From sequence record NC_070999.1: a DNA stretch of 64,000 bases, one strand, 5' to 3'. Below are positions 44,324-61,924 of the stretch, one piece after another. The notes beneath the pieces are model-generated. The model was not told where the DNA came from and searched no databases. It worked only from the letters and a program-made list of their open reading frames with translations. The position numbers and the translations under genes are program-made. Position 1 is the first letter of the stretch, and each line of letters begins with the position of its first letter.

Positions 44324-46420
44324 TTAGTTTGTAAACACGTACCGCAAGTACGGCGTACCAGAGACAGACGAAATGTTAACCCCGCTTACTGTGAATGTCA
44401 TCACTATTGCCCCAGACAGGTTCGATTTCAAAGTGATGCTAGCACCGCTTGCGATGTATCCATTAATTTCAGCCCTGCTGAATTTTGATACAAACGACGA
44501 ACCGGATACTGTATCAGAAACATGGAACATCATGTTATTTACCAATGCCGCGTTGGTAATAGTGATTGGCCCAGCCACGGCTGGCGACCCTGGTCCAGTG
44601 TATCCGGCTGACAGAGTGTTGCTCTCCCCTACAATCAGTTTTGGTTTTGACTGGATAGTTCCAAACACAGAAATAATGGCCGCTCTTGGTGTGGTGTTTG
44701 CCGTTATATCCGAGCTGCTCTCCACGGCTATTGCGTAAGCTCTAAATCCATTTACACGTGTCACAGTGCAGACCCCGAATTGGAATCCGATATCATTGGA
44801 CACCCAAGCTTCATCCGCAAACGAGAAAGTCAACGAAGTCCCGTCACTCATGCCAGCAACAATGGTTTTAATCGCAGAGCCTACAGAAAGCGTGGCAATA
44901 TTGATACCTATGTCATTTAGACCGTTATATAAGTGGAATTTGTTCCTTGGAACACTTCTTACCAATAACCCTGCCTGATCTTCTTTATAGATGCTCTTGA
45001 CGACACCTGACCCGCCATCAAATAGTTGCAACAGGCTTATCTTACCGTCAAGTATGGAAATACCTTGCGGTTCATGTTGAGTAAGCGTTGTGATTGATAG
45101 CGGCGCACCCATCGAACTCCTTCTGAATGCCATGTAATCAAGAAGTACTCCGCCAGTAGACATCTTATATAGCGTCCAGTAGTCGTTCCATGCTCCGCCA
45201 GTCGATGACGCCCAAGCGCCACCGCATGTGACATACAGCTGACCGCCGCTGTATGTCAAACCTTGGGGGTAGCCGCCCTTCACCATCATTAAAGGAATGT
45301 TTGTATCACCTAGGAATCCATTCACCCTATCAAGGATGGACAGCCTGACGATAAAGGCGCTGGTGGCGTTGACATCTTGCAGTTGATATATCCTATCGGA
45401 GTCCTTGTCGTAGCAGAAGGGGAAATCCTTATACAGACCTGTGCATGTCGTCTCAGTCACCAAGCCGGTTACGAAGCTGTAAGTCGCAATCTTCGAGTCA
45501 GTGGACCCTCCGATAAAAACAACGTCATCGCTGATCACACCAATCCCTTGACCGTGACTAGCGATGTAGGGGGACCCAGCTGATTTGACGCCAGTGGATT
45601 TGTTTATGCGATATATTTTTGAATTGTATGGCGACCCAGTGCCGTCATCTTCTGTGATAAAATAATAGTTCTCACTCTCGGCTAGAGCTTGCGGATATGC
45701 AGCCCCGGACAGCGGCTCTTCCCACTGGGAAGAATATTTGGTAGGTAGGAAACCACGGTTTGCGGAGATAGTCATTGCCTCCACAACCCCATCGGAATCA
45801 AGCAGTGATGTATTGAGGTTTGTTCTAGTTGCGAGTGAAGAAACTAAATCTTCGTTAAAAAGCTCGTTACTTCTATCAACAAACCCACCGCTCGACGGAT
45901 TTGTACCAGCGGCAACAGCTCCAGCGGGGCCAGAGAACGCCTTCCCGGTACTCTCTTGCAGCAACACATCGTTAACGTTTACCAGTCTTCCACCTTGTTC
46001 AAAACTACCGTCAACCAGGTTGTATCCTGATTCTAAATAAGTTCTACGTAAAGCTTCTCTTGTAATTACACGCTCATCCCTAGTTACAATACCCCAACCT
46101 TTCTTACCACCTGGGGTAGGGGAACTATTAGCTGGAACTACATAGGGTAATTTACCATTCCAACTGTACCAGTATCCATCCGTTGGATAAAAGACGCATT
46201 TATCCCGATCACCAATACCTAAAGTCCCTCCACTAACAAAGTCAAAACCAGCTGGTTTAAACCCAACATCTTTCAAAGCTTGTTGTACAGTCTTGTGTTG
46301 TTTACCGAAACGATCCTGCCACAAAGCAGCTGGGGAATTCATCGCATAATCAAGCGAAATAGCGTTGTCTTGTAAGTCTTCTGTTGCTGAAGATCCAATA
46401 GGATTTTGTGTGAAAAACAT
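44324..46420 (-). CDS. Tailspike/RBP 1: shared anchor plus probable beta-propeller head
   Basis: N-terminal DRFG..PAGFDF.GG and REALRRTY..GSFEQGG modules; head with SHGQGIG, YPQGLTY, HEPQGIS motifs. Confidence 0.8.
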   Translation of the reverse strand: MFFTQNPIGSSATEDLQDNAISLDYAMNSPAALWQDRFGKQHKTVQQALKDVGFKPAGFDFVSGGTLGIGDRDKCVFYPTDGYWYSWNGKLPYVVPANSSPTPGGKKGWGIVTRDERVITREALRRTYLESGYNLVDGSFEQGGRLVNVNDVLLQESTGKAFSGPAGAVAAGTNPSSGGFVDRSNELFNEDLVSSLATRTNLNTSLLDSDGVVEAMTISANRGFLPTKYSSQWEEPLSGAAYPQALAESENYYFITEDDGTGSPYNSKIYRINKSTGVKSAGSPYIASHGQGIGVISDDVVFIGGSTDSKIATYSFVTGLVTETTCTGLYKDFPFCYDKDSDRIYQLQDVNATSAFIVRLSILDRVNGFLGDTNIPLMMVKGGYPQGLTYSGGQLYVTCGGAWASSTGGAWNDYWTLYKMSTGGVLLDYMAFRRSSMGAPLSITTLTQHEPQGISILDGKISLLQLFDGGSGVVKSIYKEDQAGLLVRSVPRNKFHLYNGLNDIGINIATLSVGSAIKTIVAGMSDGTSLTFSFADEAWVSNDIGFQFGVCTVTRVNGFRAYAIAVESSSDITANTTPRAAIISVFGTIQSKPKLIVGESNTLSAGYTGPGSPAVAGPITITNAALVNNMMFHVSDTVSGSSFVSKFSRAEINGYIASGASITLKSNLSGAIVMTFTVSGVNISSVSGTPYLRYVFTN

Positions 46421-46534
46421 ATAAAACCTCTTTGATTAATAGGTAGTTAAAGAAGTCATTTAAGCTTCTTTAAAATCAGTTCATAAGATCTGAGTTAATG
46501 ATTATTTGCGATAAGTTTATATAAAGGAACTATT

Positions 46535-47551
46535 ATGCAAATTAATCAATTTAAAAACTCTGAATTAAAAGAGTTTTATTTAAAAGCTAAAATGGATATT
46601 GAACTCATTGAAACCAATATCCTAATGAACAAAGAAAAGTACGATGGTTGTGAATCTAGTTCTGATGAACAGTCATTGTTGAATCAAGTTTCCTCTTACG
46701 CAAAAGAAACTTACAATGAAGATGTTACCCCTGACATCGCTGGTATGGAAAGTTTGGTAGAGAAACTTAAATCGGGCTGGGGTAAGATCAAAGAGTGGTT
46801 TAAATCTAAAGATCGTAAGAGTAAAGTTTCTGGACATATTGGTAAAACCAAGAAAGAACTTCAGCTGTACGCAACTGATGCTTGGTTAAATCAAATGACT
46901 TTCAAGAACGTAGGTAAAGCTAAGTTTAAATTACCTGAGATTTTTAAGGAAGTCAACACTCCAAATGGTGTTAAGAAGATCATTGAATCTTCCCTTAAAC
47001 AAGTACAGTCCGAATACCAGAAACAACACCAAAATAGTTCAGCACGTTTAAGTAATGGTTTGAAACTATTCAACCAATACGATAAGGTTAAAATCCCAGA
47101 TACTTTATCTAAAGAAGATTTCGATAAATACGAAACGGAATTAGCCAAGCACTTTCCGATTAAACCTGAAAAGCTTAAAGACACTAGTATTGATGAAGTT
47201 GTAAAGATGTTTAATCTTTCTACGGAAGTCGCTGGTGAGCTTCCTGTGTTAAATAAGGAAGGGGTGAAAGAAGCCGTTAAAGTAATGTCAGAACTATGTG
47301 ACATCGCCAGTGGGTTTGAGAGCAAAACAGTCGATTTATTGTCAGCTGGTATTGATTACGACGATCGTGATGGTTCTGACTTCTGGTATCGAATGCATGA
47401 GAAACATTCTAAATACGAGAAAGAACTTTTCAGTGCTATCAACTGGGGTGAAGTAACTAGTTCAGTAGTGGATATTGAAATCGGTTTTGAGAAACAAGTT
47501 ATTAAGCTACTTAAGTTTCTTGAAATGTGGATCTGGTGTTCTATTAAATAA
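46535..47551 (+). CDS. Putative internal head (ejection-type) protein
   Basis: 338 aa; IAGMESL putative protease site followed by amphipathic KLKSGWGKIKEWFK. Confidence 0.6.
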   Translation: MQINQFKNSELKEFYLKAKMDIELIETNILMNKEKYDGCESSSDEQSLLNQVSSYAKETYNEDVTPDIAGMESLVEKLKSGWGKIKEWFKSKDRKSKVSGHIGKTKKELQLYATDAWLNQMTFKNVGKAKFKLPEIFKEVNTPNGVKKIIESSLKQVQSEYQKQHQNSSARLSNGLKLFNQYDKVKIPDTLSKEDFDKYETELAKHFPIKPEKLKDTSIDEVVKMFNLSTEVAGELPVLNKEGVKEAVKVMSELCDIASGFESKTVDLLSAGIDYDDRDGSDFWYRMHEKHSKYEKELFSAINWGEVTSSVVDIEIGFEKQVIKLLKFLEMWIWCSIK

Positions 47552-47554
47552 AAT

Positions 47555-47586
47555 AACCTACCTAACCGTAATTGGTTAGGTAGGTT
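47555..47586 (+). terminator. Hairpin terminator
   Basis: aacctacctaacc-gtaatt-ggttaggtaggtt. Confidence 0.8.
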
Positions 47587-47618
47587 TAAATCCTGTATAA
47601 TTAAAAATTTACTGTGTC

Positions 47619-47647
47619 CTATATTTTTTCAGATAGATATTATTAAG
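47619..47647 (+). promoter_or_regulatory. Early-type promoter motif (identical to 5942..5970)
   Basis: ctatattttttcagatagatattattaag. Confidence 0.75.
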
Positions 47648-47694
47648 ATGAGTAAACCAAGTAAGTTGTTTCAAAACAGTCTAGGAGAATGATT

Positions 47695-48066
47695 ATGCGT
47701 TTTAAACACGATAGTTTAATGAAAGTAAAGAAGGTTTTAATGACTCGTGTAAGTTACATCATTAACTTGCAAATCCGTAATGGTGAGAAAGCTGTTGATC
47801 TCGCTACCAAGTACAAAATCAACCCCAGTACTATTTCTGAACTGAAACTTCAGAAAGTTGATAAGATGAGTTTAGATCGTCTTATTACTTGTGTTGATAA
47901 AATGGGATTGGAATATTCCATCGGGATTGCGAATTCCAATGGTTATAAAACTATAGACGTTTCTTTACCGAAGTATGACAATGATCCAGTTATTCGTCAG
48001 ATTGATATGACACGTCATCAACACAAACATGAATCTAGCAAAAACGTAACAACTCGAGCGGTATAA
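47695..48066 (+). CDS. XRE/HigA-like helix-turn-helix protein
   Basis: KAVDLATKYKINPSTISELKLQKVDKMSLDRLI pattern; AGGAG SD favours ATG 47695. Confidence 0.7.
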   Translation: MRFKHDSLMKVKKVLMTRVSYIINLQIRNGEKAVDLATKYKINPSTISELKLQKVDKMSLDRLITCVDKMGLEYSIGIANSNGYKTIDVSLPKYDNDPVIRQIDMTRHQHKHESSKNVTTRAV

Positions 48067-48070
48067 AGAG

Positions 48071-48412
48071 ATGATCAAAGAAATTCTATCTAATAGTGAA
48101 TGTGTAGAGAAACAACTCATTAAAACATTCCCGGAGTTTAATCAGCAATTCCCGGAAGAGTTAAAGCTAACTTTGATCAATATGATCAAACACGATGAAA
48201 CGGTTACTGTATTCCCTAACACTGTGGAAGTTCAAAATAGTACCTTTAAGCAACTTGTAATCAAAATCTGTAAAGAGTGGGTGATCTTTATTACCGAGGA
48301 GTTGACTGAATACACTTGTTTCTATCGACAAGCTAATTTGGATAAACTTAAATCTTTTATTGCACTACACAGTGAACAAACACTAGTAGGAGAATTATAC
48401 GCTAAGTGTTAG
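48071..48412 (+). CDS. Hypothetical protein
   Basis: 113 aa, operonic spacing. Confidence 0.7.
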   Translation: MIKEILSNSECVEKQLIKTFPEFNQQFPEELKLTLINMIKHDETVTVFPNTVEVQNSTFKQLVIKICKEWVIFITEELTEYTCFYRQANLDKLKSFIALHSEQTLVGELYAKC

Positions 48413-48425
48413 GAGATTTGTTAAA

Positions 48426-48527
48426 ATGAAATTAACAAAACGTTCCGGAACAGTTATTGTAATTACAGTAGTGTTCTGGGTAATAACAGGGATAGTTGGA
48501 TACCAACTTTACCATGCCGCAGTGTAA
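48426..48527 (+). CDS. 33-aa single-TM membrane peptide (not in ORF track)
   Basis: MKLTKRSGTVIVITVVFWVITGIVGYQLYHAAV, AGGAG SD. Confidence 0.6.
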   Translation: MKLTKRSGTVIVITVVFWVITGIVGYQLYHAAV

Positions 48528-48541
48528 AAGGAAACAATGAA

Positions 48542-49876
48542 ATGACCAAGAAAAACAAAGAAGCTAAAGCAACAGAAGTTCCCCCGGTAGAAACTACCGA
48601 AGTTGTAGTTGAAAAAATTAAAGATCAGTCAGAAGCTACTTTTGACCATATTTATCCGGTAGTTAAAGTTGTAGAACCTGTGGTAATGGATAACGTAGAG
48701 ATTCGTCCTAAGTACCCAATGTCACGAGTTACTGACAAACCTTTGCTGGTTGTGGGTGGTAAACAGATTGAACTGAAAGAAGTGGAACTCAGTACCGATT
48801 ACTTCTTTAGCAATATTGGACACCGCCGCTTCCCTAGTAACTATCGATTCAATTCTCACTTTAACCCACAAGAGATGAAGAGTGTCGATAAAGAACCTAA
48901 GTGGTACGGTGCAGAAGTAAATGGAATCCAATTCTTCTTGACCTGTGGCTCTCACGTTGAAATCGAACGACTAAATAACGATACTACATTTGGTAGTATC
49001 GTGACAGATGGTCGTAAACCAGCTATTAAGTTCGCTTACTCCAGTATGATAGTGGAGACTCTGGGTATTCGTAGTTACGAGGAAACCAAACTCTTTAATG
49101 TAGGTATCCGAGCGAGTTACTTGGGTCTTGATAATGTTAAACTTACAGATGGCCATTTCCACATCGACAACTCTTGTGATTTGTCAAACGTAGATCTGGG
49201 TATCTTTAATGTTTCATCTGTACGTTCACTGCGTATCAGCCAATTCACTGGACATCGACTTTCTCTTAATGGTTTTGGTAATATCAATATCCATAGTGTA
49301 AGTTGTTACTGTAATGACGAAAATGCTTTCATTTTGGAACTTCCTGCTAATAAATCAGTTGATCTGGTTATTAGCAAGACTTCTCTGAATGACTTCAAGT
49401 TTATTCATTATGGTCGTGATCTAGCAACCGGCATTGATACTCAATCAAAGATAGTTATTAATAAGCGTTTGGATTATGGTCACATTGTAGGTGTTAATCC
49501 TGTACCGTTCGTTAAAGTTGGTAAGAGTTCTATCTTGGTAGGTGAGAAGTTGTTCACTGCTGTAGAGATGCTCGGTAAGATCTCTATGAACACTTTGGGG
49601 GAGATTGCACCACTATCCCCTTGGTACCCTACTCCGGCGTTTGGCTCACCTCGTACGCTTGATCCATTGGTTGGTAAGGACACTGCTGATAAAGCTTACG
49701 CAGTTGCTTTCTATAACGGAGCTAATGGAAAAGTACCTGATCATCAACCTGATCAAATCGTAGTTGATATTGTTCAAACTACAATTGATCAAATTCGATC
49801 TAAAGTTAAAGTGTTTGCTTTGATCGAAACACTAGAACCCGATGGACATCATTATGCCGATGAATATCCGTACTGA
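48542..49876 (+). CDS. Hypothetical protein with central beta-solenoid-like repeats
   Basis: 444 aa; NVKLTD..HIDNSCDLSNVDL..NVSSVRSLRISQ pattern. Confidence 0.8.
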   Translation: MTKKNKEAKATEVPPVETTEVVVEKIKDQSEATFDHIYPVVKVVEPVVMDNVEIRPKYPMSRVTDKPLLVVGGKQIELKEVELSTDYFFSNIGHRRFPSNYRFNSHFNPQEMKSVDKEPKWYGAEVNGIQFFLTCGSHVEIERLNNDTTFGSIVTDGRKPAIKFAYSSMIVETLGIRSYEETKLFNVGIRASYLGLDNVKLTDGHFHIDNSCDLSNVDLGIFNVSSVRSLRISQFTGHRLSLNGFGNINIHSVSCYCNDENAFILELPANKSVDLVISKTSLNDFKFIHYGRDLATGIDTQSKIVINKRLDYGHIVGVNPVPFVKVGKSSILVGEKLFTAVEMLGKISMNTLGEIAPLSPWYPTPAFGSPRTLDPLVGKDTADKAYAVAFYNGANGKVPDHQPDQIVVDIVQTTIDQIRSKVKVFALIETLEPDGHHYADEYPY

Positions 49877-50570
49877 TACACTAAGCGCACTTGAAAGAAT
49901 TACTAGAAAGTTTGGAGATATGTATCTTCATCTTTCTGGTGAAGGGAAAGTTTCTTTTCAAGGATTAAGAGACAGTTCCGCAAGTGGGTTCATTGTAACC
50001 CGCTTTGACGGTACCTTTGGTTGTATGGAACGTTTAATCGAAGATTGTACTTGTGCTTTGCAAGATGCAATCTTGTTCATGGGAAACCTGAACATCGTCC
50101 CTAATCTGAACTTAGATGAAAATACCAAGTACGTACTAACTCCAGAGGAGTGGAATAAGGAACTATCTGATTTTGCTAAGAAAATCGAAGAAAATCCTTT
50201 TAAAAAGGATTTTCACCATTACATTTATTACAAAGATAAAAATGGTAAGGATGAAACAGTAATCAGCATCGTTTTACAACCTCTTTGTAATGCCGAAGTT
50301 ATCGGTGAATTTCACGCCAGTAGTGAAGCAGAGTTCTTGGGAGAGGTTACTGCTGTTAAAAGTAAAGATGGTTACGACACTATTATGTTCACCTCTGATA
50401 AGTTTGCGTTTTTATTGGAGACCACTAACGACAAACATCTTTACGACGATGAGAACTGTCTAAAATACAGAAGACATATTCCTACAGCAGGTGATTACCT
50501 ACTAAGAGATAATGGTTCTGGTAAACTGATAGTTTTACCTCGTAGAGATTATGTAGGGTATTACCACTAA
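49842..50570 (+). CDS. Hypothetical protein
   Basis: About 240 aa; exact start uncertain (49842/49854/49860). Confidence 0.75.
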   Translation: MDIIMPMNIRTDTLSALERITRKFGDMYLHLSGEGKVSFQGLRDSSASGFIVTRFDGTFGCMERLIEDCTCALQDAILFMGNLNIVPNLNLDENTKYVLTPEEWNKELSDFAKKIEENPFKKDFHHYIYYKDKNGKDETVISIVLQPLCNAEVIGEFHASSEAEFLGEVTAVKSKDGYDTIMFTSDKFAFLLETTNDKHLYDDENCLKYRRHIPTAGDYLLRDNGSGKLIVLPRRDYVGYYH

Positions 50571-50575
50571 GTTAG

Positions 50576-50603
50576 AGTGCAACTGGGAACTCCCAGTTGC
50601 ACT
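50576..50603 (+). terminator. Hairpin terminator
   Basis: agtgcaactggg-aact-cccagttgcact followed by atttt. Confidence 0.8.
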
Positions 50604-50615
50604 ATTTTACCTGCT

Positions 50616-50645
50616 CTATATTTTTTCAGATAGATATTATTTAAG
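50616..50645 (+). promoter_or_regulatory. Early-type promoter motif (one extra T)
   Basis: ctatattttttcagatagatattatttaag. Confidence 0.75.
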
Positions 50646-50677
50646 TGTAAATCTAGGAGTGTATAAAGGAAACTAAG

Positions 50678-51776: not shown

Positions 51777-51789
51777 TACCAACTTAATT

Positions 51790-51805: not shown

Positions 51806-51814
51806 ATATAGAAA

Positions 51815-52192: not shown

Positions 52193-52201
52193 GAACTTGT
52201 A

Positions 52202-54457: not shown

Positions 54458-54476
54458 TTTGGTAGAATAACTAATA

Positions 54477-54510
54477 AACTCTCTACTCCCAATTAAGGGA
54501 GTAGAGAGTT
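54477..54510 (+). terminator. Hairpin terminator
   Basis: aactctctactccc-aattaa-gggagtagagagtt, 14-bp stem. Confidence 0.85.
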
Positions 54511-54605
54511 ATAATTTTATTTGTGTTTTTTTGTTTCAAGATCTTATGACCGTTCTGAGGAATCACTTTAATAGTGATTTGAATTTTCATAAGAGGAACA
54601 GATTA

Positions 54606-56801
54606 ATGTCTAGCAATAAACCTTTCCCGTCGTCAGATCTTGACGTATTTAAAGACAACAGTCTTATATTAGACAACTTTGTCAACAGTCAGGATAATGA
54701 ATATCCTGATCGTTTTGGTCGTAAGAGACCAACTATTACAGGGATCATCAAAGAAGCCTTTAACGTTCGTACTGACATTTCCAATATGAATGAAACTCTT
54801 ATTGGTCAAAGTCGTTGGGACACGGTTCCTAAGAACACCAGTTTGACTTTAGGTGGCGATAACGGAGCTTTGAACAAGCAAGCACAAGCATTGTTTAACC
54901 GTACTGAAATGTTGAAAGTTCACTCTAGAGAAGCTTTACGTAGAACTTATTTAGAAGTGGGCTTAAATTTAGTTGAAGGCAGTTTTGAAGAAGGTGGGAC
55001 TTTAGAAACGCTCACAGACATACTCATCGAAGATAAAACAGGTAAATGTTATTCTTGGAAAGGTTCACTCCCAAAAGTAATCAATAAAGGTGAAACACCA
55101 AGCGAAAATGGATGGTTTTTGGTTTCTAAGTTATCTCCTGAACATTTTGGCGCAGGTGGGGAAGGAAGCACCGATGACACCTTGGCACTTAAAAGGTTTA
55201 TTCAGGCGATTTTAGATGGTGTTGATTGTAAATTTCAAAGAAATAAGATTTACAATGTTAGTTCTAACTTAAGTTTTATTCTATCTGATAAAATTTACGA
55301 AATAGATTTTAAGGATTGTGTTATTAGGTACATAACACCAATCCCCGAAATGACACTGGTCAAGGTGCTTAATTTCACCCAACCTGACCACACAAAACAA
55401 ACATCATTGAAAGTTAGTAACTTAAAAATTATTTCAGATATCCCCTATTTTGAATCGGTAACTGCTAGTGATAGACGAGGGATTTGGGGGATGACATTTA
55501 CAGGAATAAAAGATTTTACAGTAGAAAACTATAAAGCTGAGAATTTGTTTTACGGGTCAGGGTTAACAGCTAGTAAATATAATAAAGGTTATATCAGAAA
55601 TATTAATTTTGTTAACGTTGGGAGTAAATTTAACCCAACTAAAGATGACGTTTCTGCGTCGGATGCAGCAGGTGATGGTTTCCATTTTTACGATGTTATT
55701 GGCGATGCTTCTACGGTAATGGAAAATGTAACCACAAGTTCTTACACTGACAAGATAGGCAGGTGCGGAGTGGCTTTAGAAGCCTTTGGGAACTTAGGTA
55801 CTTCGCATAACGTTTCAATAAAAAATGGGAATTTCTTTGGGTACCATCGTGTTGTACATCAGGAAGATGGTGGAATTTCTGTTATAAGTTGGGAAGGTGG
55901 GGAGGTTAGAGATTTTTCAAACCTTTTTGTTTCTGTACAAGGTACCGTGGGGAACTTACGTGGTGTTTTTAATAATCTAAAAATCACTGTTAATCAAAAA
56001 ATTGCATATGGCGGTGTCTCTGGTTTAGTTAATTTTCAGCAGGGTGGGCGATTAGTTTTAAATGAATGTTTTATAAAATACCTGAGCAGTGTCCAGCAAA
56101 AAGGTCCGTTGACTATAAATAATTCAGTATTGGATCTTGGGTCTAAAACAATTTTTCATGCCAGTTTAAATGAAATTATTTATAACAATTGCAATTTAAT
56201 TGCTGATAATGGAAAATTTGACACATCTGGTCAGCCAAAGGGGTTTGTATTTAATAATTGTTTTGGAAAGAAATTCGTTATAGTTAGTCAAAATCCTATA
56301 GTTAAAATATCTCATTGTGAGTTCGAAGACGTTAATTTTAAACTTACCAATACAGGGACTAGAAATAGCGAAATTCGAGACACTAGTATTCACTACAGCT
56401 TAGGTACAACAATTTTAGAAAATTCTTATAACTGTGGAATTGATTTTTTAAACACCAATATCACATCTATCGGGATCTCAGTAATTTATGGCGACGGAAA
56501 CGTGGACAGCAACGTTAAGTCATGTACTTTGAAAAATGTAAAACTGCAGATTTCGAATGGAAACGCTGATCCAGAAGGTAGAGATGTAGTTCAGATAACA
56601 GGGACTAAATTCATTGCTACAGAATCAAGTTTCGGAACGTCTTTTTTTAACAAATACCAAGCTGCTGGAGTTGTTCAATCCTGTATTTTTATAGATAAAA
56701 CAACGGAACAAACATTAGTCAAAGAGACAGATGGACCTGTGTTTTTGGTCACTGGGCGCGGTAACGTATTAATAAATAAAGCTGGCGGACAGAGTATTTA
56801 A
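54606..56801 (+). CDS. Tailspike/RBP 2: anchor plus right-handed beta-helix (putative depolymerase)
   Basis: ATG 54606 with GAGG SD; DRFG motif, GSFEEGG module, PEHFGAGGEGSTDDTLAL pectate-lyase-3-like entry, beta-helix repeats. Confidence 0.85.
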   Translation: MSSNKPFPSSDLDVFKDNSLILDNFVNSQDNEYPDRFGRKRPTITGIIKEAFNVRTDISNMNETLIGQSRWDTVPKNTSLTLGGDNGALNKQAQALFNRTEMLKVHSREALRRTYLEVGLNLVEGSFEEGGTLETLTDILIEDKTGKCYSWKGSLPKVINKGETPSENGWFLVSKLSPEHFGAGGEGSTDDTLALKRFIQAILDGVDCKFQRNKIYNVSSNLSFILSDKIYEIDFKDCVIRYITPIPEMTLVKVLNFTQPDHTKQTSLKVSNLKIISDIPYFESVTASDRRGIWGMTFTGIKDFTVENYKAENLFYGSGLTASKYNKGYIRNINFVNVGSKFNPTKDDVSASDAAGDGFHFYDVIGDASTVMENVTTSSYTDKIGRCGVALEAFGNLGTSHNVSIKNGNFFGYHRVVHQEDGGISVISWEGGEVRDFSNLFVSVQGTVGNLRGVFNNLKITVNQKIAYGGVSGLVNFQQGGRLVLNECFIKYLSSVQQKGPLTINNSVLDLGSKTIFHASLNEIIYNNCNLIADNGKFDTSGQPKGFVFNNCFGKKFVIVSQNPIVKISHCEFEDVNFKLTNTGTRNSEIRDTSIHYSLGTTILENSYNCGIDFLNTNITSIGISVIYGDGNVDSNVKSCTLKNVKLQISNGNADPEGRDVVQITGTKFIATESSFGTSFFNKYQAAGVVQSCIFIDKTTEQTLVKETDGPVFLVTGRGNVLINKAGGQSI

Positions 56802-56804
56802 TTA

Positions 56805-56837
56805 AACCCTACTTACTCCTAAGGAGTAAGTAGGGTT
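56805..56837 (+). terminator. Hairpin terminator
   Basis: aaccctacttactcc-taa-ggagtaagtagggtt followed by atttt. Confidence 0.85.
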
Positions 56838-56898
56838 ATTTTATATTCTTTATTTTACTGATTTTATGACCTTAGAAATTAAATCAAGGAATAAGTAT

Positions 56899-59181
56899 AT
56901 GAGTCATAACACTGGTAATGATTTAGAATCTTCAGATATCTTAGATTTTGAAGATAACTGTGAAAACTTAGATGTTTTAATGAACACTGATCAAGACCAC
57001 TGGACAGATCGTCTTGGTAACAAACGTCCTACAATTGATTACGCTTTGCGTATGGCTGGATTCACTCCTGCTGGTTTTGATTTCACTACAGGCGGTGTTT
57101 TAAAGAATGGTGATAGAAACAAGTGTGTATTTAACCAAGCTGATCAAACTTGGTATAGTTGGTCAGGAGATCTTCCTTATAATGTAATTGCTGGAAGTGT
57201 TCCTGGAGAAGGTTGGAAAGTTGTCAATAGGCATTCCTTAATCATAGCAAGAGAGGCACTTCGTAGAACTTATCAAGAAGTTGGATTAAATCTGGTTGAA
57301 GGTTCTTTTGAACAAGGTGGCACCCTTGTAAATAGTAATGATGTGTTACTCCACGAAACTAGTAGTAAGGTATATGCTGGTGAGGTAGGATCATATCCAG
57401 CTGGAACAGAACCTGTTGGGGCTACTTGGATAGATATGTCAGCTGTGTCTGTGCGGGATCAGTTATCTGTCAATAACGGCGCCTCGATGATTGGCACCTC
57501 GGTAGGCCGGACTATTGAAAACAGACTATCAGACACCATTAAAGTTATTGACTATAAAACCCTTGGTAGGACATACCCAGAGGCTATTGCGACCTGTATA
57601 GCCTACGCAAAGGAGCTACAAGCCTCTGGGAAGTCGGTAAAAATATCCTTCGAAAATTGCGATGCTTTTATAACAACGACAGTGGGGTTTGTTCTCGACT
57701 TCCCCGTTATCTGGGACCAGTGTAAAACTAGGATTACTGGCGATGGTTCTATACCCACCCTTTTAAAATGTACAGCTGCTGACATTTGGTTGTGTAACTT
57801 TAGCCTTCGCGGGGTGGGTGACGGCGACAACACTAGACTACTGTGGATGAGTGGCGCGCCTAGTTTCCGCATTCAGAACGGTGACGTCAGTAATGGTAAG
57901 GAGGGCTGGTGGTGTGATGGTGGATCTTACGGTGGATTCATTGATGTCTTCACGGTCAACAACAATGTGTCACGCGGGATATACTGTGATGTTGTGACCA
58001 GCGCAGAACATTCGTGGCGTGACGTGTACGTTGGGTTGTCGAAGTCATACCTAACCGACTCTACAGTTGGCATTGAAATGTACTCAAGCAGTGTGATCGA
58101 TTCTGGCGGGTATCACTGGTACAACGTGTTAGTCGTAAATAACACGGCTGCTGGCGCGAAAGCTGGTAAAGGTGTTTATCTGAATGGGTCAAATTTCCAA
58201 GGCATTACTCCGATTCATTGGGTTGGTGGGGGCGCTGATGGTTTTATCAAAGCTAACGGTAAGACTGGCGTGAACATCAGAAACTGGGCGCAGGTTAAGT
58301 GCGTTAACGTCTGGACATCTAACTGCGAAATCAACAGCGCAGATAGCCCTCAGTGGATTGGTGGTAATTGTTCAACTGGTTTTACCCTCAAGGGTACTAT
58401 TAAAGACCCAGCATTCATCGCCCCACGTTGCGGCGAGGCGGTAGATGGAGCTTATCTGCTAGACCCAGCGCTCACGATAACTGGATTTATCAGAGAGTAT
58501 AATACAATCACCTCTCTAATAACCAATAACCTTACTAAATGGATTTTTTATACGAGAAACTCGCTTGTAAAAACCACATCAACAGAAAGCTCTTTTACAG
58601 CCGAAAGGTACAGTGATCAGACTGGGTTAACCAAGTTTTACCGTCGCATAAATTCTGTCGGTGAAAACACTTTCCTTAAAAGCGATTTCACCGACCACAC
58701 AGTAATGCGACAAAATGGCCAGTTGTATGTCCCAGGTGGGTATGCGCCGTTCACCGGTGTTCACCAGATGCGTTCTAGTGAGTACATTGATAATGGGAAA
58801 GTTGTCATATTTGTGAATTCAGAACAAATTGTTGATCGTCTAACCGTATACAACTCTGAATTAGAAGTCGATGAGGATGTCGCTGTAGTGACAGAGGGTG
58901 AGGTAAAGCTGTGTAACGAGGATGACTCTCTGTTGTTTGCTGGGATTGTAGTTGAGTCACAGCTAATCGGTGACTACTATCTCGTCACTGTTGCAGCATC
59001 TGGTGATAACTCAATGCCACAACTCGATTGCGTGGCTGTTGATGGTGATTTCTCAATTGGCGACCTATTATCAACGTCAGCAACAGGTCTGCTTAAGCGG
59101 TATGAAGGTAATGATTTGCGGATCCCTTGCTTGCGTGTGAAAGGAGTTAGAAACGGAAAGGCCTATGGGTACTTCCTTTGA
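56899..59181 (+). CDS. Tailspike/RBP 3: anchor, beta-helix and probable C-terminal chaperone-like domain
   Basis: ATG 56899 with AAGGA SD; NTGN..DRLG, PAGFDF and GSFEQGG modules; GASMIG neck; C-terminal FTGVH...GDLLSTS. Confidence 0.85.
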   Translation: MSHNTGNDLESSDILDFEDNCENLDVLMNTDQDHWTDRLGNKRPTIDYALRMAGFTPAGFDFTTGGVLKNGDRNKCVFNQADQTWYSWSGDLPYNVIAGSVPGEGWKVVNRHSLIIAREALRRTYQEVGLNLVEGSFEQGGTLVNSNDVLLHETSSKVYAGEVGSYPAGTEPVGATWIDMSAVSVRDQLSVNNGASMIGTSVGRTIENRLSDTIKVIDYKTLGRTYPEAIATCIAYAKELQASGKSVKISFENCDAFITTTVGFVLDFPVIWDQCKTRITGDGSIPTLLKCTAADIWLCNFSLRGVGDGDNTRLLWMSGAPSFRIQNGDVSNGKEGWWCDGGSYGGFIDVFTVNNNVSRGIYCDVVTSAEHSWRDVYVGLSKSYLTDSTVGIEMYSSSVIDSGGYHWYNVLVVNNTAAGAKAGKGVYLNGSNFQGITPIHWVGGGADGFIKANGKTGVNIRNWAQVKCVNVWTSNCEINSADSPQWIGGNCSTGFTLKGTIKDPAFIAPRCGEAVDGAYLLDPALTITGFIREYNTITSLITNNLTKWIFYTRNSLVKTTSTESSFTAERYSDQTGLTKFYRRINSVGENTFLKSDFTDHTVMRQNGQLYVPGGYAPFTGVHQMRSSEYIDNGKVVIFVNSEQIVDRLTVYNSELEVDEDVAVVTEGEVKLCNEDDSLLFAGIVVESQLIGDYYLVTVAASGDNSMPQLDCVAVDGDFSIGDLLSTSATGLLKRYEGNDLRIPCLRVKGVRNGKAYGYFL

Positions 59182-59384
59182 CAACAAACCTTTAAAAAGG
59201 TACCATGCTGAAACAAGTGATGGTATTTGGAGAAAATATTTAAAATTTGGTAAAGTTCAGACAGCTGCACTGGGGTGGTAATTCTTATCGGTAGTGGGGG
59301 TAACTGTTACAGTTAAAAATAACCTCTGTATCACTACACCCTCCCCCACACTGTTGTTACTGTTAATTTTTAAGGAGTTGAGAA

Positions 59385-59786
59385 ATGACTTTACAAGATT
59401 TCCTTTCTCACTATCAATACAAACCTGATCCTGTTAAGAAAGATATTTGGATTATTCCTAACAAAGTTAACAATCAATATCTTGATGATTGTGATGGATT
59501 CTGTTTAGGAGTGTTATTCTACGTTCTTGCTAATAGTTCACTTCTTACGTTCTGGTATTTGTTACTGTTTACAGATACTAGAATTTATTATGTGATTACT
59601 AGTAAAAACATTGGTCATGTAGTATTGAAACACAAAGGTCTTTATATTGACACTTATTCAAAAGCTTGGGTGAGTAAAGAACAGATGTCGTCTTATGGAC
59701 ATAAGTTCCATTGGTCTAAAATGTTCTTTTTCTGGCAAGTTGCTTTGAAGATGTTAATTGGTAAGATCTTAGTTAAAATGAAATAG
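59385..59786 (+). CDS. Transglutaminase-like (BTLCP/LapG-like) cysteine protease
   Basis: YKPDP..DIW, DDCDGF (Cys), GHVVL (His), YID (Asp) in papain/transglutaminase order. Confidence 0.6.
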   Translation: MTLQDFLSHYQYKPDPVKKDIWIIPNKVNNQYLDDCDGFCLGVLFYVLANSSLLTFWYLLLFTDTRIYYVITSKNIGHVVLKHKGLYIDTYSKAWVSKEQMSSYGHKFHWSKMFFFWQVALKMLIGKILVKMK

Positions 59787-59795
59787 TAATAAATA

Positions 59796-59829
59796 CTCTC
59801 TACTTCTCCAATTAAGGAGAAGTAGAGAG
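59796..59829 (+). terminator. Hairpin terminator
   Basis: ctctctacttctcc-aattaa-ggagaagtagagag. Confidence 0.8.
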
Positions 59830-59885
59830 ATTCTTTAATTGATTTTATGTACTTTAGTTTAACAGTAAAGAGAAGGTAAAGATTT

Positions 59886-61001
59886 ATGAGCTTTAATACA
59901 GGTAACGATTTACCGAGCTTAGACGAGCGTGATCTCTACGATAACGCTACTAATCTTGACAAAGCAATGAATAGCACTGATCCAACCTGGACAGATAGAT
60001 TTGGAGTTGAGAAACCTACAATTGACGCAGCTTTGAAATCTGCAGGATTTATGCCAGCTGGTTTTGACTTTGTAACTGGCGGCACTCTTCAACCTGGAGA
60101 TCGTAATAAAGCTGTTTATAACCCAGCACCTAATGGTGATAATAACTGGTATCGTTGGAATGGGTCGTTTCCAAAGGAAATTGCTGCTAATAGTCAACCT
60201 AATCCTAAAGATGAAAATAATTGGGTTCCTGTTATATTTAAATCTAGGTTCGGCAGAGAAAGCGATATTTTACAGTATATGATCGGACCTAATAAGGTTT
60301 CAATCACAGCTCATCGTGGATACTGGAGATTTTCTACTGAAAACTCTATTAAATCTATAACTAAAGCAGGTATGCTTGGTTTTGACATGGTGGAGTTAGA
60401 TGTAGAGTTTACCTCTGATATGGTCCCTGTTTTGTTACATGACGTGACTTTAGATAGAACCACATCTGGTACTGGTAGCGTTAGAACAAAGACCTTTTCG
60501 GAACTTTCCGGTTTATACTTAACCAACGACCCGGATGGTGATCGTGAACCAATCCCTACATTCAGGGATGCTGTGATCGCATGTAAGAAGTTTGGTCTTT
60601 CGATTAACATAGATTGGAAATTTTCTGGGACGTGGTACGATGACGATAAGTATTTGCGTATCGTTTATGATATTTTAATTAAGGAAGGTTATAGTCATAA
60701 ATCATTTTTCATGATTAATGACCACAAAAACCGGCTCCAAATGAAAAATATAGATCCAACGATGTCTATGGGATTTTTAACTACTAATCCTTCCGATATT
60801 AATATTATAAACACCTTTTATCCTGGATGTTTAGTTGGAATGAGAGTAGGAACCTCGCAAACCATCATAGATCAGTTTTTAGCTAATAAAACACCAGTCT
60901 ACATCTATGGGTGTGAAACACATCAGCAGATTGAACAGGCGTTAAAATCTGGCGCTAGTTTTATTGAAACTAACGACTTTATACCTTCTGGAGTGATCTA
61001 A
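59886..61001 (+). CDS. Tailspike/RBP 4: anchor fused to glycerophosphodiester phosphodiesterase (GDPD)
   Basis: N-terminal NTGN..DRFG..PAGFDF module; ITAHRG, TENS, VELDV..TSD..VLLHD..LDRTT GDPD motifs. Confidence 0.88.
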   Translation: MSFNTGNDLPSLDERDLYDNATNLDKAMNSTDPTWTDRFGVEKPTIDAALKSAGFMPAGFDFVTGGTLQPGDRNKAVYNPAPNGDNNWYRWNGSFPKEIAANSQPNPKDENNWVPVIFKSRFGRESDILQYMIGPNKVSITAHRGYWRFSTENSIKSITKAGMLGFDMVELDVEFTSDMVPVLLHDVTLDRTTSGTGSVRTKTFSELSGLYLTNDPDGDREPIPTFRDAVIACKKFGLSINIDWKFSGTWYDDDKYLRIVYDILIKEGYSHKSFFMINDHKNRLQMKNIDPTMSMGFLTTNPSDINIINTFYPGCLVGMRVGTSQTIIDQFLANKTPVYIYGCETHQQIEQALKSGASFIETNDFIPSGVI

Positions 61002-61924
61002 TGTATATCAGTAATAGTTTGCTTTTAACACCTCTCTCTTGTGGAGGCGGTGGTGGTCAGGGTAAGTTATTCACAACTATACCTAGTGAGTTGGCAGAAA
61101 GAAAGGTACTTATTAACTCACCTGAAAAAAGTTGGTTTAAAATGGGTGCGTTAGATCCGTATCTGGAGCATCATTTTCCTAATGTTGGACCTGGAATGAT
61201 TGTTAATATTAAGTTGACAATACAAACTCCAGGTAAGACCTTTAAAATCACTGGTCTAGGACAGGATTTAAGCTTCAACGTCGTTCCAAACGTAACCACG
61301 CCTTTTGATATTAACATTCCTATTTTTACCAATCCTACACAGAAATATATCAATATTAGAGGAATGGAAATTAACACTGTTTTATCAGATGTTAGAATTT
61401 CAATAACTGGTAACGAAGTCTTTCAAGACTTTGTAGTGATGAGAACACCCGCGACACTGCTTGAAAATATACATTATTCCCCATCCGTTAATAACATCAT
61501 ACCCACTAAGATGAATCTGTCAAAAGACTTGCTTACATCTGGTGTTATTGTAAAAACAGATCAGGGAATAAATTGGAATTCAGGTCCGGAAAATAAGCAA
61601 AAAACATTTGGACCAGTTAGGATCGTCCCAGTTGAAATGCAGGGTGGGGTCTTAATGGCGCGTTTTAAATACAGTTCCAATTTACCCTTTATGTTAAGAC
61701 TATGGAGTCTTACAGGTGTAACAACAGATCTGTTTTTTCCAGCCGGGGAAAATCAAGACATTTTTAGAGATACTTACGTAAAGACTAAAAATGACGTTAT
61801 TATAGCAACAATGTCCAATTTTGATTACGCTGGGACTTGGAACTGTTCCGTCCAAGCTGCTGATTTTTCTTTCACTTCTATCAATAGTGACGTGAAGTTG
61901 ATAAGAGAATTTAAAGGTTGGTAA
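61001..61924 (+). CDS. Probable virion accessory protein coupled to the GDPD spike
   Basis: 307 aa; TAATG overlap; N-terminal LLL..GGGGG; two beta-rich halves. Confidence 0.65.
   Translation: MYISNSLLLTPLSCGGGGGQGKLFTTIPSELAERKVLINSPEKSWFKMGALDPYLEHHFPNVGPGMIVNIKLTIQTPGKTFKITGLGQDLSFNVVPNVTTPFDINIPIFTNPTQKYINIRGMEINTVLSDVRISITGNEVFQDFVVMRTPATLLENIHYSPSVNNIIPTKMNLSKDLLTSGVIVKTDQGINWNSGPENKQKTFGPVRIVPVEMQGGVLMARFKYSSNLPFMLRLWSLTGVTTDLFFPAGENQDIFRDTYVKTKNDVIIATMSNFDYAGTWNCSVQAADFSFTSINSDVKLIREFKGW

What the first reader, a model, noticed from the sequence alone, without database searches (positions are those of the whole stretch)
44324..61924. Four-spike mix-and-match adsorption system, possibly aimed at phosphodiester-linked surface glycans
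Four genes share N-terminal bricks in different combinations. Brick A (NTGN/SSD..DN...DR[FL]G) is in all four. Brick B (PAGFDF..GG..WY.W.G) is in RBP1, RBP3 and RBP4. Brick C (REALRRTY..GSFE.GG, tail-spike TSP1/gp66 N-domain-like) is in RBP1, RBP2 and RBP3. The heads are unrelated (propeller, two beta-helices, GDPD) and differ in GC content. Two heads resemble teichoic-acid-directed modules, suggesting hosts with glycerol- or ribitol-phosphate O/K antigens. The common anchor implies interchangeable docking on a phiKZ-type virion.
Basis: partly seen in the sequence, partly recalled or inferred. Interest (0 to 1): 0.75.

Follow-up and report, generated by a model that had tools for sequence, protein, structure and literature searches.

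The report
Four swappable-head tailspikes, Aeromonas jumbo phage
The window comes from the published Aeromonas jumbo phage pAEv1810, and the finding is its set of four tailspike genes, which keep position-specific attachment ends but carry heads swapped in from unrelated phages; this design is well known, and the one unusual part is a phosphodiesterase head that is rare in phages of Gram-negative bacteria.

Summary
The window is Aeromonas phage pAEv1810 (genus Ferozepurvirus, a phiKZ-like nucleus-forming jumbo phage).

- **Heads.** The four heads are unrelated to each other: a beta-propeller (RBP1), a beta-helix (RBP2), an unverified fold (RBP3) and an intact GDPD phosphodiesterase (RBP4).
- **GC content.** The RBP1 and RBP3 heads are GC-rich (0.47) against a window mean of 0.38.

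New points from this check:

- **Bricks B and C are tandem copies of one domain** (Pfam PF18668). Together with the brick-A helix they match the 'head domain' of CBA120-type tailspikes and the N-terminus of Shigella phage Sf11 gp13, which docks on a baseplate adaptor helix.
- **Anchors are slot-specific, not interchangeable.** They are 85-100% identical within a slot across five related phages and only 33-56% identical between slots.
- **Heads vary.** There are 14 head types among 18 full-length spikes, and all four pAEv1810 heads are unique in the genus.
- **Direct evidence of exchange.** Brick C plus the head of RBP1 is 88% nucleotide-identical to a spike of the unrelated 53-kb phage BUCT696.
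- **Shared upstream motif.** Every slot in all five phages is preceded by the 12-nt motif GATYTTATGWMC, with one copy out of twenty missing the exact pattern.

The 'teichoic-acid-like target' idea is only a lead. The likeness to Gram-positive phage modules is real at fold and family level, but no glycerol-phosphate glycan of Aeromonas was found.

Verdict: a new member of a known kind, of moderate interest.

The parts
44324..46420 (-). RBP1 (slot 1), 698 aa: brick A + brick B + brick C + beta-propeller + C-terminal beta-sandwich
   Evidence: ORF; RefSeq 'tail fiber protein'; AF2 model with mean pLDDT 70.9; Foldseek top hit is the phage P68 tail fibre (6iab), E 3e-11, followed by NHL and WD40 propellers.
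46061..46420 (-). RBP1 slot-specific anchor (brick A aa 1-52, brick B aa 53-120), GC 0.417
   Evidence: 94-98% identical to slot-1 anchors of AVP1, ACP1, PS1 and PS2; aa 4-111 match Sf11 tailspike gp13 (PDB 9occ), E 7e-9; PF18668 hit at aa 61-105.
44218..46060 (-). Imported cassette: brick C (aa 121-190), the head of RBP1 and about 100 nt past the stop; GC 0.47-0.51
   Evidence: 88% nucleotide identity to Chaseviridae phage BUCT696 gp64 over window 44218-46033; 92% amino-acid identity over aa 122-698; GC step.
43643..44086 (-). 147-aa ORF inside the same GC-rich island (GC 0.49); absent from the four relatives; function unknown
54606..56801 (+). RBP2 (slot 2), 731 aa: brick A (aa 1-52), slot-2-specific helical segment in place of brick B (aa 53-107), brick C (aa 108-175), right-handed beta-helix head (aa 176-731)
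   Evidence: the AF2 head has block-mean pLDDT mostly above 90; Foldseek top hits are CBA120 TSP3 and TSP1, GH110, the Phi92 colanidase and the HK620 spike; profile hits to GH55, pectin lyase and phiAB6 spike caps. The head has no relative in 50,697 phage records and only 18 distant ones (27-35% identity) among 1.84 billion representative proteins.
56899..59181 (+). RBP3 (slot 3), 760 aa: brick A + brick B (aa 1-117), brick C (aa 118-185), GC-rich head of unverified fold (aa 186-760)
   Evidence: two PF18668 stretches. Head homologues are 77-87% identical and include a 951-aa fibre of a P2-like prophage in a 60%-GC bacterial contig. The last 145 aa are 36% identical to the Shewanella phage X14 tailspike. 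No solved relative for the head.
59886..61001 (+). RBP4 (slot 4), 371 aa: brick A + brick B (aa 1-120), short linker, C-terminal GDPD phosphodiesterase domain (aa ~135-371); no brick C
   Evidence: PF03009 E 6.5e-23, 82.5 bits against a cut-off of 23.6. The HRG, ExD, HD and D-x-K motifs align with solved GDPDs.
61001..61924 (+). 307-aa orphan ORF whose start overlaps the RBP4 stop by one base (TAATG); possible partner of the GDPD spike; unknown function
   Evidence: No hit in Pfam, PHROGs, phage records or IMG/VR.
59385..59786 (+). 133-aa ORF conserved between slot 3 and slot 4 in all five phages; unknown function
   Evidence: no family hit.
46479..46490 (-). 12-nt motif GATYTTATGWMC upstream of RBP1
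54540..54551 (+). Same motif upstream of RBP2
56860..56871 (+). Same motif upstream of RBP3
59841..59852 (+). Same motif upstream of RBP4
54477..54510 (.). 14-bp-stem hairpin (terminator-like on both strands) just before the RBP2 motif
56805..56837 (+). 15-bp-stem hairpin between RBP2 and RBP3
59796..59829 (.). 14-bp-stem hairpin before the RBP4 motif
61923..61954 (+). 14-bp-stem hairpin closing the cluster after the 307-aa ORF
44299..44320 (.). 9-bp-stem hairpin directly after the RBP1 stop

Best explanation
The four genes encode the tailspikes (receptor-binding proteins) of Aeromonas phage pAEv1810.

**Transcription units.** Each gene is its own unit: a hairpin, then the 12-nt motif, then the ORF.

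**Protein layout.**
- Each protein starts with a helix (brick A). By homology with Sf11 gp13, this helix forms a trimeric bundle that clasps an adaptor helix on the tail or baseplate.
- One or two small beta-domains of the PF18668 type follow (bricks B and C). Together with brick A they correspond to the D1/D2 or TD1/TD2 'head domain' of CBA120-type spikes.
- Bricks A and B are specific to each genomic slot and are kept by all relatives, so each spike probably has its own docking site.
- Brick C with its leading helix is the neck and junction, and it travels with, or borders, the exchangeable head.

**Head exchange.** Heads are replaced by recombination at either edge of brick C. The donors include unrelated phages and prophages of the same hosts.

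**Function.** Each head recognises, and in at least two cases probably cleaves, a different surface glycan. RBP2 is a beta-helix depolymerase fold, and RBP4 is a metal-dependent phosphodiesterase with intact catalytic motifs. The set of four therefore fixes which Aeromonas surface types the phage can adsorb to.

**Shown versus inferred.**
- Shown: the domain layout, the slot-specific conservation, head turnover, the imported cassette, the intact GDPD motifs and the shared motif.
- Inferred: trimer formation, docking geometry, presence in the virion, promoter function of the motif and all substrates.
For: - **Identity and annotation:**
- **Brick pattern:**
- **Bricks B and C are both PF18668 and are homologous to each other:**
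- **Bricks A and B match the Sf11 gp13 N-terminus**. Residues 4-59 of gp13 bundle with an adaptor helix of the distal tail protein (PMC12724387).
- **Brick C aligns to the D2 region of CBA120 TSP3**.
- **The anchor module is widespread:** it occurs in 755 phage records, mostly as a single-copy tailspike in 45-50 kb phages.
- **Within-slot versus between-slot identity, and 14 head types among 18 full-length spikes:**
- **Breakpoints** fall at about aa 110-130 or aa 170-195.
- **BUCT696 cassette:**
- **The RBP1 head family sits on P22, T7 or PF18668 anchors**, and the RBP2 head family sits on T7 or P2 anchors.
- **The RBP3 head occurs on a P2-like prophage fibre**.
- **Folds:**
- **GDPD motifs:**
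- **Motif and hairpins:**
Against: - No virion proteomics or baseplate structure exists for this genus in the literature I could search.
- The genes do not lie in a recognisable baseplate module. Their neighbours are an RNase H, an HTH protein and unknowns.
- No adaptor protein was identified.
- AF2 gave low confidence for the anchors as monomers.
- The RBP3 head fold is unknown.
- High GC alone does not prove import, because the major head protein gene is equally GC-rich.
- Slot 3 is reduced to an anchor-only ORF in PS1 and PS2, so not every slot is essential.
Confidence: 0.8

Rival explanations
1. The spikes form a branched complex as in Ackermannviridae (CBA120): only one or two spikes touch the baseplate, and the others hang on them through their TD1-like domains.
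For: The B/C tandem equals TD1/TD2. In CBA120, spikes that have only these domains (TSP1, TSP3) attach to other spikes rather than to the virion (PMC6517402; PMC11414711). RBP2 has a distinct, long helical segment in place of brick B that could serve as a platform.
Against: None of the four has the 170-340-residue XD or anchor region that builds the CBA120 branch. Heads start at about aa 120-190, and no family or solved-structure hit covers such a region. All four have their own brick A helix, which in Sf11 binds a tail adaptor directly.
Confidence: 0.2
2. The GDPD head of RBP4 is not a serotype-specific receptor-destroying enzyme. It acts on a common envelope phosphodiester (a lipid head group, a phosphoglycerol decoration or a glycan-lipid linkage) to help penetration, as proposed for the GDPD 'petal' of the phage 812 central spike.
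For: - In Gram-positive phages, GDPD sits on central spikes or tail tips.
- The E. coli K-12 phage DTL carries a GDPD-ended tail protein. I recall K-12 as lacking O antigen; this was not checked here.
- No glycerol-phosphate O antigen of Aeromonas was found.
- The GC of this head equals the genome background, so it is not an obviously recent, serotype-driven import.
Against: The head sits on a lateral-spike anchor, in a slot whose head differs in every host group, and it is unique to pAEv1810 in the genus. That is the pattern expected of a specificity module. Glycerol-phosphate O antigens do exist in other Gram-negative genera (reference list of PMC3210612).
Confidence: 0.3
3. One or more of the four genes is a dispensable or non-virion relic, so the 'four-spike system' overstates what is on the particle.
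For: Slot 3 is only a 130-131-aa anchor in PS1 and PS2. RBP1 lies 8 kb away on the other strand. There are no proteomic data.
Against: All four pAEv1810 ORFs are intact and full length. All four have conserved anchors, the upstream motif and flanking hairpins.
Confidence: 0.12
4. The GC differences reflect codon adaptation of highly expressed genes rather than foreign origin.
For: The major head protein gene has the same GC (about 0.50) as the RBP1 and RBP3 heads.
Against: Within RBP1 and RBP3, GC steps up at the brick B/C boundary inside a single ORF. The RBP1 segment is 88% nucleotide-identical to a 49%-GC phage. RBP3 head relatives sit in a 60%-GC prophage.
Confidence: 0.1

Closest known systems
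Four-tailspike complex of Ackermannviridae (E. coli phage CBA120 TSP1-4)
   Same: Four spike genes, conserved N-terminal domains and variable C-terminal heads. The tandem PF18668-type domains (D1/D2 = TD1/TD2) have an embedded N-terminal helix bundle. Recombination at the conserved 5' ends is thought to drive host change.
   Different: There are no XD (gp10-like) or long anchor regions. The genes are not one contiguous block, since RBP1 lies 8 kb away on the other strand. The virion is a nucleus-forming jumbo phage. One head is a GDPD and one is a propeller, instead of four beta-helices.
Shigella siphophage Sf11 tailspike gp13 docked on distal tail protein gp17 (PDB 9OCC)
   Same: The N-terminal ~110 residues (bricks A and B) are homologous, E 7e-9 to 3e-8. 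This is the only solved example of how this anchor meets a tail: three helices bundle with one adaptor helix.
   Different: Sf11 has one spike type on a non-contractile tail. Here there are four paralogous anchors on a contractile-tailed jumbo phage, and the adaptor is unknown.
Aeromonas phage BUCT696 gp64 (Chaseviridae), annotated 'putative pectin lyase'
   Same: 92% amino-acid and 88% nucleotide identity to brick C plus the head of RBP1.
   Different: It has a different N-terminal 70 residues and belongs to a different virus family, with a 53-kb genome. The 'pectin lyase' label does not fit the predicted propeller fold.
GDPD domains of Gram-positive phage tail proteins (for example the Staphylococcus phage 812 central spike 'petal', PDB 9EUL/9EUF)
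   Same: Same enzyme family, E about 1e-9, and a proposed role in cutting phosphodiester-linked wall polymers.
   Different: Those sit on central spikes or tail tips of phages of teichoic-acid-walled hosts. RBP4 puts the domain on a lateral tailspike anchor of a Gram-negative phage.
GDPD-ended tail proteins of Drexlerviridae phages DTL (E. coli) and Snitter (Erwinia)
   Same: Gram-negative hosts, GDPD at the very C-terminus (27-31% identity, E 2e-16 and 3e-14), followed directly by an ORF of about 265-310 aa.
   Different: Their N-termini are unrelated. Their downstream ORFs are homologous to each other (E 8e-26) but not detectably to the 307-aa ORF here. Their records give only a putative tail-protein label, and I know of no functional study; I ran no literature search on them.
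Staphylococcus phage P68 tail fibre (PDB 6IAB)
   Same: It is the best solved-structure match of the RBP1 head, Foldseek E 3e-11.
   Different: Only 11% identity with low TM-scores (0.25 and 0.34), and the same model also matches generic NHL and WD40 propellers. This is a shared fold class, not family membership.

Membership tests
PF18668 (Tail_spike_N) / CBA120-type tailspike 'head domain' | Score above the Pfam gathering cut-off (25 bits) | tested here: met
   RBP2 28.6, RBP3 32.5 and RBP4 27.5 bits. RBP1 scores 22.5 bits as a whole protein and 26.1 bits for its N-terminal 190 aa.
PF18668 (Tail_spike_N) / CBA120-type tailspike 'head domain' | Two tandem copies (D1/D2, TD1/TD2) preceded by an N-terminal helix | tested here: met
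   RBP3 has two Pfam stretches. Bricks B and C are mutually homologous. A helix is predicted at aa 13-28 of RBP1 and aa 9-26 of RBP2. RBP4 has only copy 1 and RBP2 only copy 2.
PF18668 (Tail_spike_N) / CBA120-type tailspike 'head domain' | Homotrimer | not testable with these tools
   Only monomer models could be made.
Ackermannviridae branched TSP complex | XD (T4 gp10-like) domains and a baseplate anchor domain in two of the spikes | tested here: not met
   There are no such hits in Pfam, PHROGs or PDB sequences, and the N-terminal regions are only 120-190 aa long.
Ackermannviridae branched TSP complex | Four adjacent tsp genes | tested here: not met
   Three genes are clustered at 54.6-61.0 kb, with a 133-aa ORF between two of them. 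The fourth lies at 44.3-46.4 kb on the opposite strand.
GDPD (PF03009) glycerophosphodiester phosphodiesterases | Domain match above the cut-off | tested here: met
   E 6.5e-23, 82.5 bits against 23.6. There are thirty solved relatives with E up to 1, the best at 1.5e-17.
GDPD (PF03009) glycerophosphodiester phosphodiesterases | Catalytic and metal-binding motifs (HRG; ExD; HD; E/D-x-K) | tested here: met
   All four motifs align with 3i10, 3qvq and 2pz0. The last acidic ligand is D here, as in 3i10, and E in 3qvq and 2pz0.
GDPD (PF03009) glycerophosphodiester phosphodiesterases | Activity and substrate | not testable with these tools
   No substrate can be derived from the sequence.
Right-handed beta-helix (pectin-lyase-like) tailspike depolymerases | Beta-helix fold with the N-terminal cap motif | tested here: met
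   For RBP2: the head's block-mean pLDDT is mostly above 90, the Foldseek top hits are CBA120 TSP3 and TSP1 and other spikes, and the profile hits cap regions of GH55, 7chu, Phi92 gp150 and phiAB6. Two family members hit PF13229.
   Only a 51%-probability hhalign match to the RBP2 family, and it is driven partly by brick C. There are no Pfam or PDB hits for the head.
Beta-propeller receptor-binding heads of staphylococcal phages (P68 type) | Propeller fold | tested here: met
   Strand pattern at aa 228-500. Foldseek hit to 6iab at E 3e-11, followed by NHL and WD40 propellers.
Beta-propeller receptor-binding heads of staphylococcal phages (P68 type) | Sequence relationship or teichoic-acid binding | tested here: not met
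   11% identity and no sequence hit to any solved head. All 21 sequence relatives carry anchors of Gram-negative phages or none. Binding itself is not testable here.
phiKZ-like (Chimalliviridae) virion | Taxonomic placement and hallmark genes | tested here: inconclusive
   The record places the phage in Ferozepurvirus. PMC12837969 puts the genus in Chimalliviridae, with PhuZ, multisubunit RNAPs and inner-body proteins. In the window I saw only a sub-threshold phiKZ_IP hit, 20.5 bits against a cut-off of 27.

The most novel reading that the evidence does not exclude
RBP4 is a lateral tailspike whose enzymatic head is a phosphodiesterase rather than a glycosidase or lyase. It would cut a teichoic-acid-like, glycerol-phosphate-containing O antigen or capsule of an Aeromonas veronii serotype that has not yet been described chemically. 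With the adjacent 307-aa orphan protein, it would form a two-protein module also present, in non-homologous form, in the few Gram-negative phages that have GDPD-ended tail proteins.
Probability: 0.25. Interest if true: 0.6.

Novelty: new member of a known kind. Interest (0 to 1): 0.4.

Why it matters
Aeromonas phages are being developed for aquaculture, and host range is their main limitation.

- **Reading guide for the genus.** Four fixed slots, a 12-nt motif that flags each slot, slot-specific anchors, and heads that turn over completely between close relatives. Host specificity can therefore be read from four short gene segments.
- **Cross-family exchange.** A nucleus-forming jumbo phage draws spike heads from the same pool as small Chaseviridae, P22-like, T7-like and P2-like phages of its hosts. 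This is a clean, sequence-level example of exchange between virus families.
- **The GDPD spike.** It points to a possible class of phosphodiester-linked surface polymers in Aeromonas that has not been described. It also points to a phosphodiesterase type of phage 'depolymerase' for which I found no characterised example in phages of Gram-negative hosts.

Tried and rejected
- **RBP2 head homologues.** The word-indexed protein search found only the protein itself. The exhaustive HMMER search was needed.
- **Related heads in bacterial genomes.** Two scans of genome contigs with the RBP3 head and with its alignment found nothing. The host species of the prophage carrying the related fibre therefore rests only on its 60% GC.
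- **IMG/VR scans.** Scans for the 307-aa ORF and for the GDPD head found nothing.
- **The 307-aa ORF.** I tested whether it is a relative of the ORFs that follow GDPD tail proteins in DTL and Snitter. BLASTP and hhalign were both negative.
- **The 147-aa GC-rich ORF.** I tested whether it is a remnant of a displaced slot-1 head. There is no similarity to any relative's spike.
- **Adaptor or baseplate protein.** I looked among the genes between RBP1 and RBP2 and in the 1049-aa neighbour. PHROGs and PDB sequences gave an HTH protein, a membrane protein and unknowns.
- **Glycerol-phosphate glycans.** Literature searches for Aeromonas O antigens containing glycerol phosphate found none; they found only examples in Citrobacter, Proteus and Hafnia.
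- **sigma-70-type promoter scan.** It found fewer sites than in shuffled sequence (39 against 51.9) and was discarded.
- **GC as proof of import.** I rejected 'high GC proves import' after seeing that the capsid gene is equally GC-rich.

Full report
**Identity of the window.** A megablast of 44000-62000 gives 100% identity over the full length to Aeromonas phage pAEv1810 (OL964756.1 / NC_070999.1, 235,066 bp; window coordinate = record coordinate minus 124,000). The record places it in the genus Ferozepurvirus. A 2025 paper on the relative Z90 places that genus in the Chimalliviridae, the nucleus-forming phiKZ-like phages, and names A. veronii as the host of pAEv1810 (PMC12837969). RefSeq already labels the four genes 'tail fiber protein', and the AVP1 record labels its four 'putative tailspike protein'.

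**The observation.** The four ORFs are RBP1 44324-46420 (-), RBP2 54606-56801 (+), RBP3 56899-59181 (+) and RBP4 59886-61001 (+). The ortholog N-termini support the RefSeq starts of RBP2 and RBP3 rather than the earliest possible start codons.
- Paralog E-values run from 1e-19 to 1e-52 where two or more bricks are shared, and are about 2e-5 for RBP2 against RBP4, which share brick A alone.
- A tblastn of the four N-termini against the whole window finds just these four loci.
- The heads have no mutual similarity.
- GC is 0.476 (RBP1 head), 0.352 (RBP2), 0.468 (RBP3, aa 186-560) and 0.373 (RBP4 GDPD), against 0.383 for the window.

**What the bricks are.**
- Pfam PF18668 (tail spike TSP1/Gp66 N-terminal domain) hits brick B in RBP1/3/4, brick C in RBP2 and both in RBP3.
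- A profile of brick B finds brick C of RBP2 at E 3e-8, and hhalign gives E 1e-4. B and C are therefore tandem copies of one small beta-domain.
- Brick C aligns to residues 99-144 of CBA120 TSP3. That is the D2 subdomain of the 'head domain', which consists of D1 with an embedded three-helix bundle, D2 and a helical neck (PMC6517402). These are called TD1/TD2 in PMC11414711.
- Bricks A and B (aa 4-111) match the N-terminus of Sf11 tailspike gp13 (PDB 9OCC) at E 7e-9. In that cryo-EM structure, residues 4-59 of three gp13 chains form a bundle with one adaptor helix of the distal tail protein (PMC12724387).
- The A+B module occurs in 755 phage records, mostly as a single copy in 45-50 kb Salmonella, Escherichia, Klebsiella and Pseudomonas phages. 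Among jumbo phages it appeared only in the Aeromonas group.

**Comparison across relatives.** I fetched the syntenic loci of AVP1, ACP1, PS2 and PS1. All have the same four slots.
- The first 110 residues are 85-100% identical within a slot and 33-56% identical between slots.
- Heads (from aa 200 on) are shared only between AVP1 and ACP1 (slots 1 and 2) and between PS1 and PS2 (slots 2 and 4).
- Counting types gives 4, 3, 3 and 4 in slots 1-4, or 14 head types among 18 full-length spikes.
- None of the four pAEv1810 heads occurs in the other four phages.
- In PS1 and PS2 the slot-3 gene is an anchor-only ORF of 130-131 aa: one truncated gene in each phage.
- Similarity between orthologues ends either at about aa 110-130 or at about aa 170-195, which are the two edges of brick C.
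- The presence of brick C varies within a slot.
- Bricks A and B therefore belong to the slot, and brick C belongs to the exchangeable part or marks its border.
- This contradicts 'interchangeable docking'. The anchors share a fold but fall into four conserved orthologous groups, as expected if each has its own site.

**Direct evidence of exchange.**
- Window 44218-46033 is 88% nucleotide-identical to gp64 of Aeromonas phage BUCT696, a 53-kb Chaseviridae phage of A. veronii. At protein level, aa 122-698 of RBP1 are 92% identical to aa 72-648 of gp64.
- The junction is the start of brick C, and GC steps from 0.417 to 0.471 there. The BUCT696 locus has GC 0.49.
- The wider RBP1 head family (21 proteins, 38-96% identity) is attached to P22-type head-binding domains (PF09008), T7 fibre N-termini (PF03906) or PF18668 anchors.
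- RBP3 head relatives (77-87% identity) include a 951-aa fibre with a P2-type N-terminus, inside a P2-like tail module of a 60%-GC bacterial contig.
- RBP2 head relatives carry T7 or P2 N-termini.
- One caveat applies. The major head protein gene (window 3670-5841) has the same high GC, so GC alone is not proof of import.

**The heads.**
- **RBP1.** The AF2 model (22-sequence alignment, mean pLDDT 70.9, head mostly 75-95) shows a run of four-stranded sheets at aa 228-500 and a C-terminal beta-sandwich at aa 528-697. The best Foldseek match in the PDB is the S. aureus phage P68 tail fibre (E 3e-11, 11% identity, TM 0.25 and 0.34), followed by NHL and WD40 propellers. The propeller is confirmed, and the likeness to a staphylococcal receptor-binding protein is at fold level only. 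The inherited 'pectin lyase' label does not fit.
- **RBP2.** It has no relative in phage records and only 18 distant ones among 1.84 billion representative proteins. The AF2 head has block-mean pLDDT mostly above 90. The top Foldseek hits are CBA120 TSP3 and TSP1, PfbA, GH110, the Phi92 colanidase, the K1 lyase and the HK620 spike. The profile matches the cap motif of GH55, 7chu, Phi92 gp150 and phiAB6. The beta-helix is confirmed.
- **RBP3.** There are no Pfam or solved-structure hits for the head, and only a 51%-probability profile match to the RBP2 family. The fold is not verified.
- **RBP4.** PF03009 scores E 6.5e-23. The HRG, ExD, HD and acidic-x-K motifs align with solved GDPDs, with D instead of E at the last site, as in 3i10. 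The domain ends at the protein's C-terminus.

**GDPD in phages.** A tblastn of the domain finds 299 phage records: Staphylococcus 245, Lactobacillus 18, Enterococcus 8 and Listeria 4, but only Salmonella 3, Escherichia 2, Erwinia 1 and the query itself among Gram-negative hosts.
- The solved phage example is the central spike of Staphylococcus phage 812, whose GDPD 'petal' is proposed to cleave teichoic acid.
- In the Drexlerviridae phages DTL and Snitter, the GDPD is likewise the C-terminal end of a tail protein.
The host, however, is Gram-negative, and my literature searches found glycerol-phosphate O antigens in Citrobacter, Proteus and Hafnia but none reported for Aeromonas. The proposed target remains a hypothesis.

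**Gene organisation.**
- Each spike gene is preceded by the motif GATYTTATGWMC, 35-60 nt before the start codon and in the gene's orientation. These four are the only exact matches in the 64-kb window.
- I derived the pattern from these four regions, so its count in the window is not an independent test. The same pattern, however, is found at all four slots of AVP1, ACP1 and PS2 and at three slots of PS1, including the anchor-only slot 3, and nowhere else in those 22-26 kb loci.
- Long-stem hairpins (9 to 15 bp) stand before or after the genes, at 44299-44320, 54477-54510, 56805-56837, 59796-59829 and 61923-61954. Terminator-like sites are enriched overall, 28 against 11.4 +/- 3.4 expected.
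- The picture is four independent cassettes of hairpin, motif, anchor and head. The TATG core recalls what I remember of phiKZ late promoters. That is memory, not a test.

**Neighbours.**
- The 307-aa ORF (61001-61924) starts at the last base of the RBP4 stop codon (TAATG). It has no relative anywhere I could search.
- DTL and Snitter also have an ORF directly after their GDPD tail gene. These two are homologous to each other (E 8e-26; unannotated in DTL) but not to the 307-aa ORF.
- The 133-aa ORF between slots 3 and 4 is conserved in all five phages and is unassigned.
- The genes between RBP1 and RBP2, and the 1049-aa neighbour, gave no structural assignment. No adaptor was identified.

**Verdict.** Two points of the interpretation fail or remain open: docking looks slot-specific rather than interchangeable, and the teichoic-acid-like target rests on one enzyme family only. 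The system is a new member of the well-known anchor-plus-exchangeable-head class, in an already published and annotated genome. The GDPD lateral spike and the per-slot motif are the modestly new elements.

**Rules.** I took no step that repairs, joins or redesigns any sequence. I built profiles of bricks B and C only to test their homology, and I used the consensus lines that the tools printed for nothing.

Noticed in passing
window 43643-44086 (-) and 44087-44323: A 147-aa ORF and the spacer up to the RBP1 stop have GC 0.49-0.51. They are absent from the four relatives and have no family hit. They lie in the same GC-rich island as the imported RBP1 head but outside the BUCT696 match, so they probably came from a different donor or a longer cassette.
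   Followed up: partly
window 3670-5841 (+): The major head protein gene is as GC-rich (about 0.50) as the imported spike heads, in a genome of about 0.38. High GC here can also mark a highly expressed core gene.
   Followed up: partly
window 43488-43517, 47555-47586, 50576-50603, 54477-54510, 56805-56837, 59796-59829, 61923-61954: These intergenic hairpins have 12-15 bp stems, and several have related stem sequences. Terminator-like sites in this region number 28, against 11.4 +/- 3.4 in shuffles.
   Followed up: partly
L010 3165-4028 (Escherichia phage DTL) and L011 3207-3998 (Erwinia phage Snitter): A conserved ORF of about 265 aa (32% identity, E 8e-26) directly follows the GDPD-ended tail protein in both phages. 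In the DTL record it is not annotated.
   Followed up: partly
L004 16610-17002 (PS2) and L005 15595-15990 (PS1): Slot 3 is reduced to an anchor-only ORF of 130-131 aa that still has the upstream motif. This is one truncated gene per phage.
   Followed up: partly
L002 13361-14377 (AVP1); L004 17514-18560 and 130-1614 (PS2); L005 1-1482 (PS1): HNH endonuclease genes sit next to spike slots in some relatives but not in pAEv1810. They may be linked to cassette turnover.
   Followed up: no
window 59385-59786 (+): A 133-aa ORF is conserved in all five phages between slots 3 and 4. It has a hydrophobic stretch and Cys/His residues and no family assignment.
   Followed up: partly
window 44219-44259: A 41-nt stretch just downstream of RBP1 is 97.6% identical to a spot in the unrelated 122-kb Aeromonas phage phiA047. 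It lies about 40 nt from the terminator-like hairpin at 44299-44320 and does not overlap it.
   Followed up: no
window 61954-64000 (-), continuing beyond the window (L008 55-3204): A 1049-aa protein is conserved next to the spike cluster in all relatives. It has no hit in PHROGs or among PDB sequences.
   Followed up: partly
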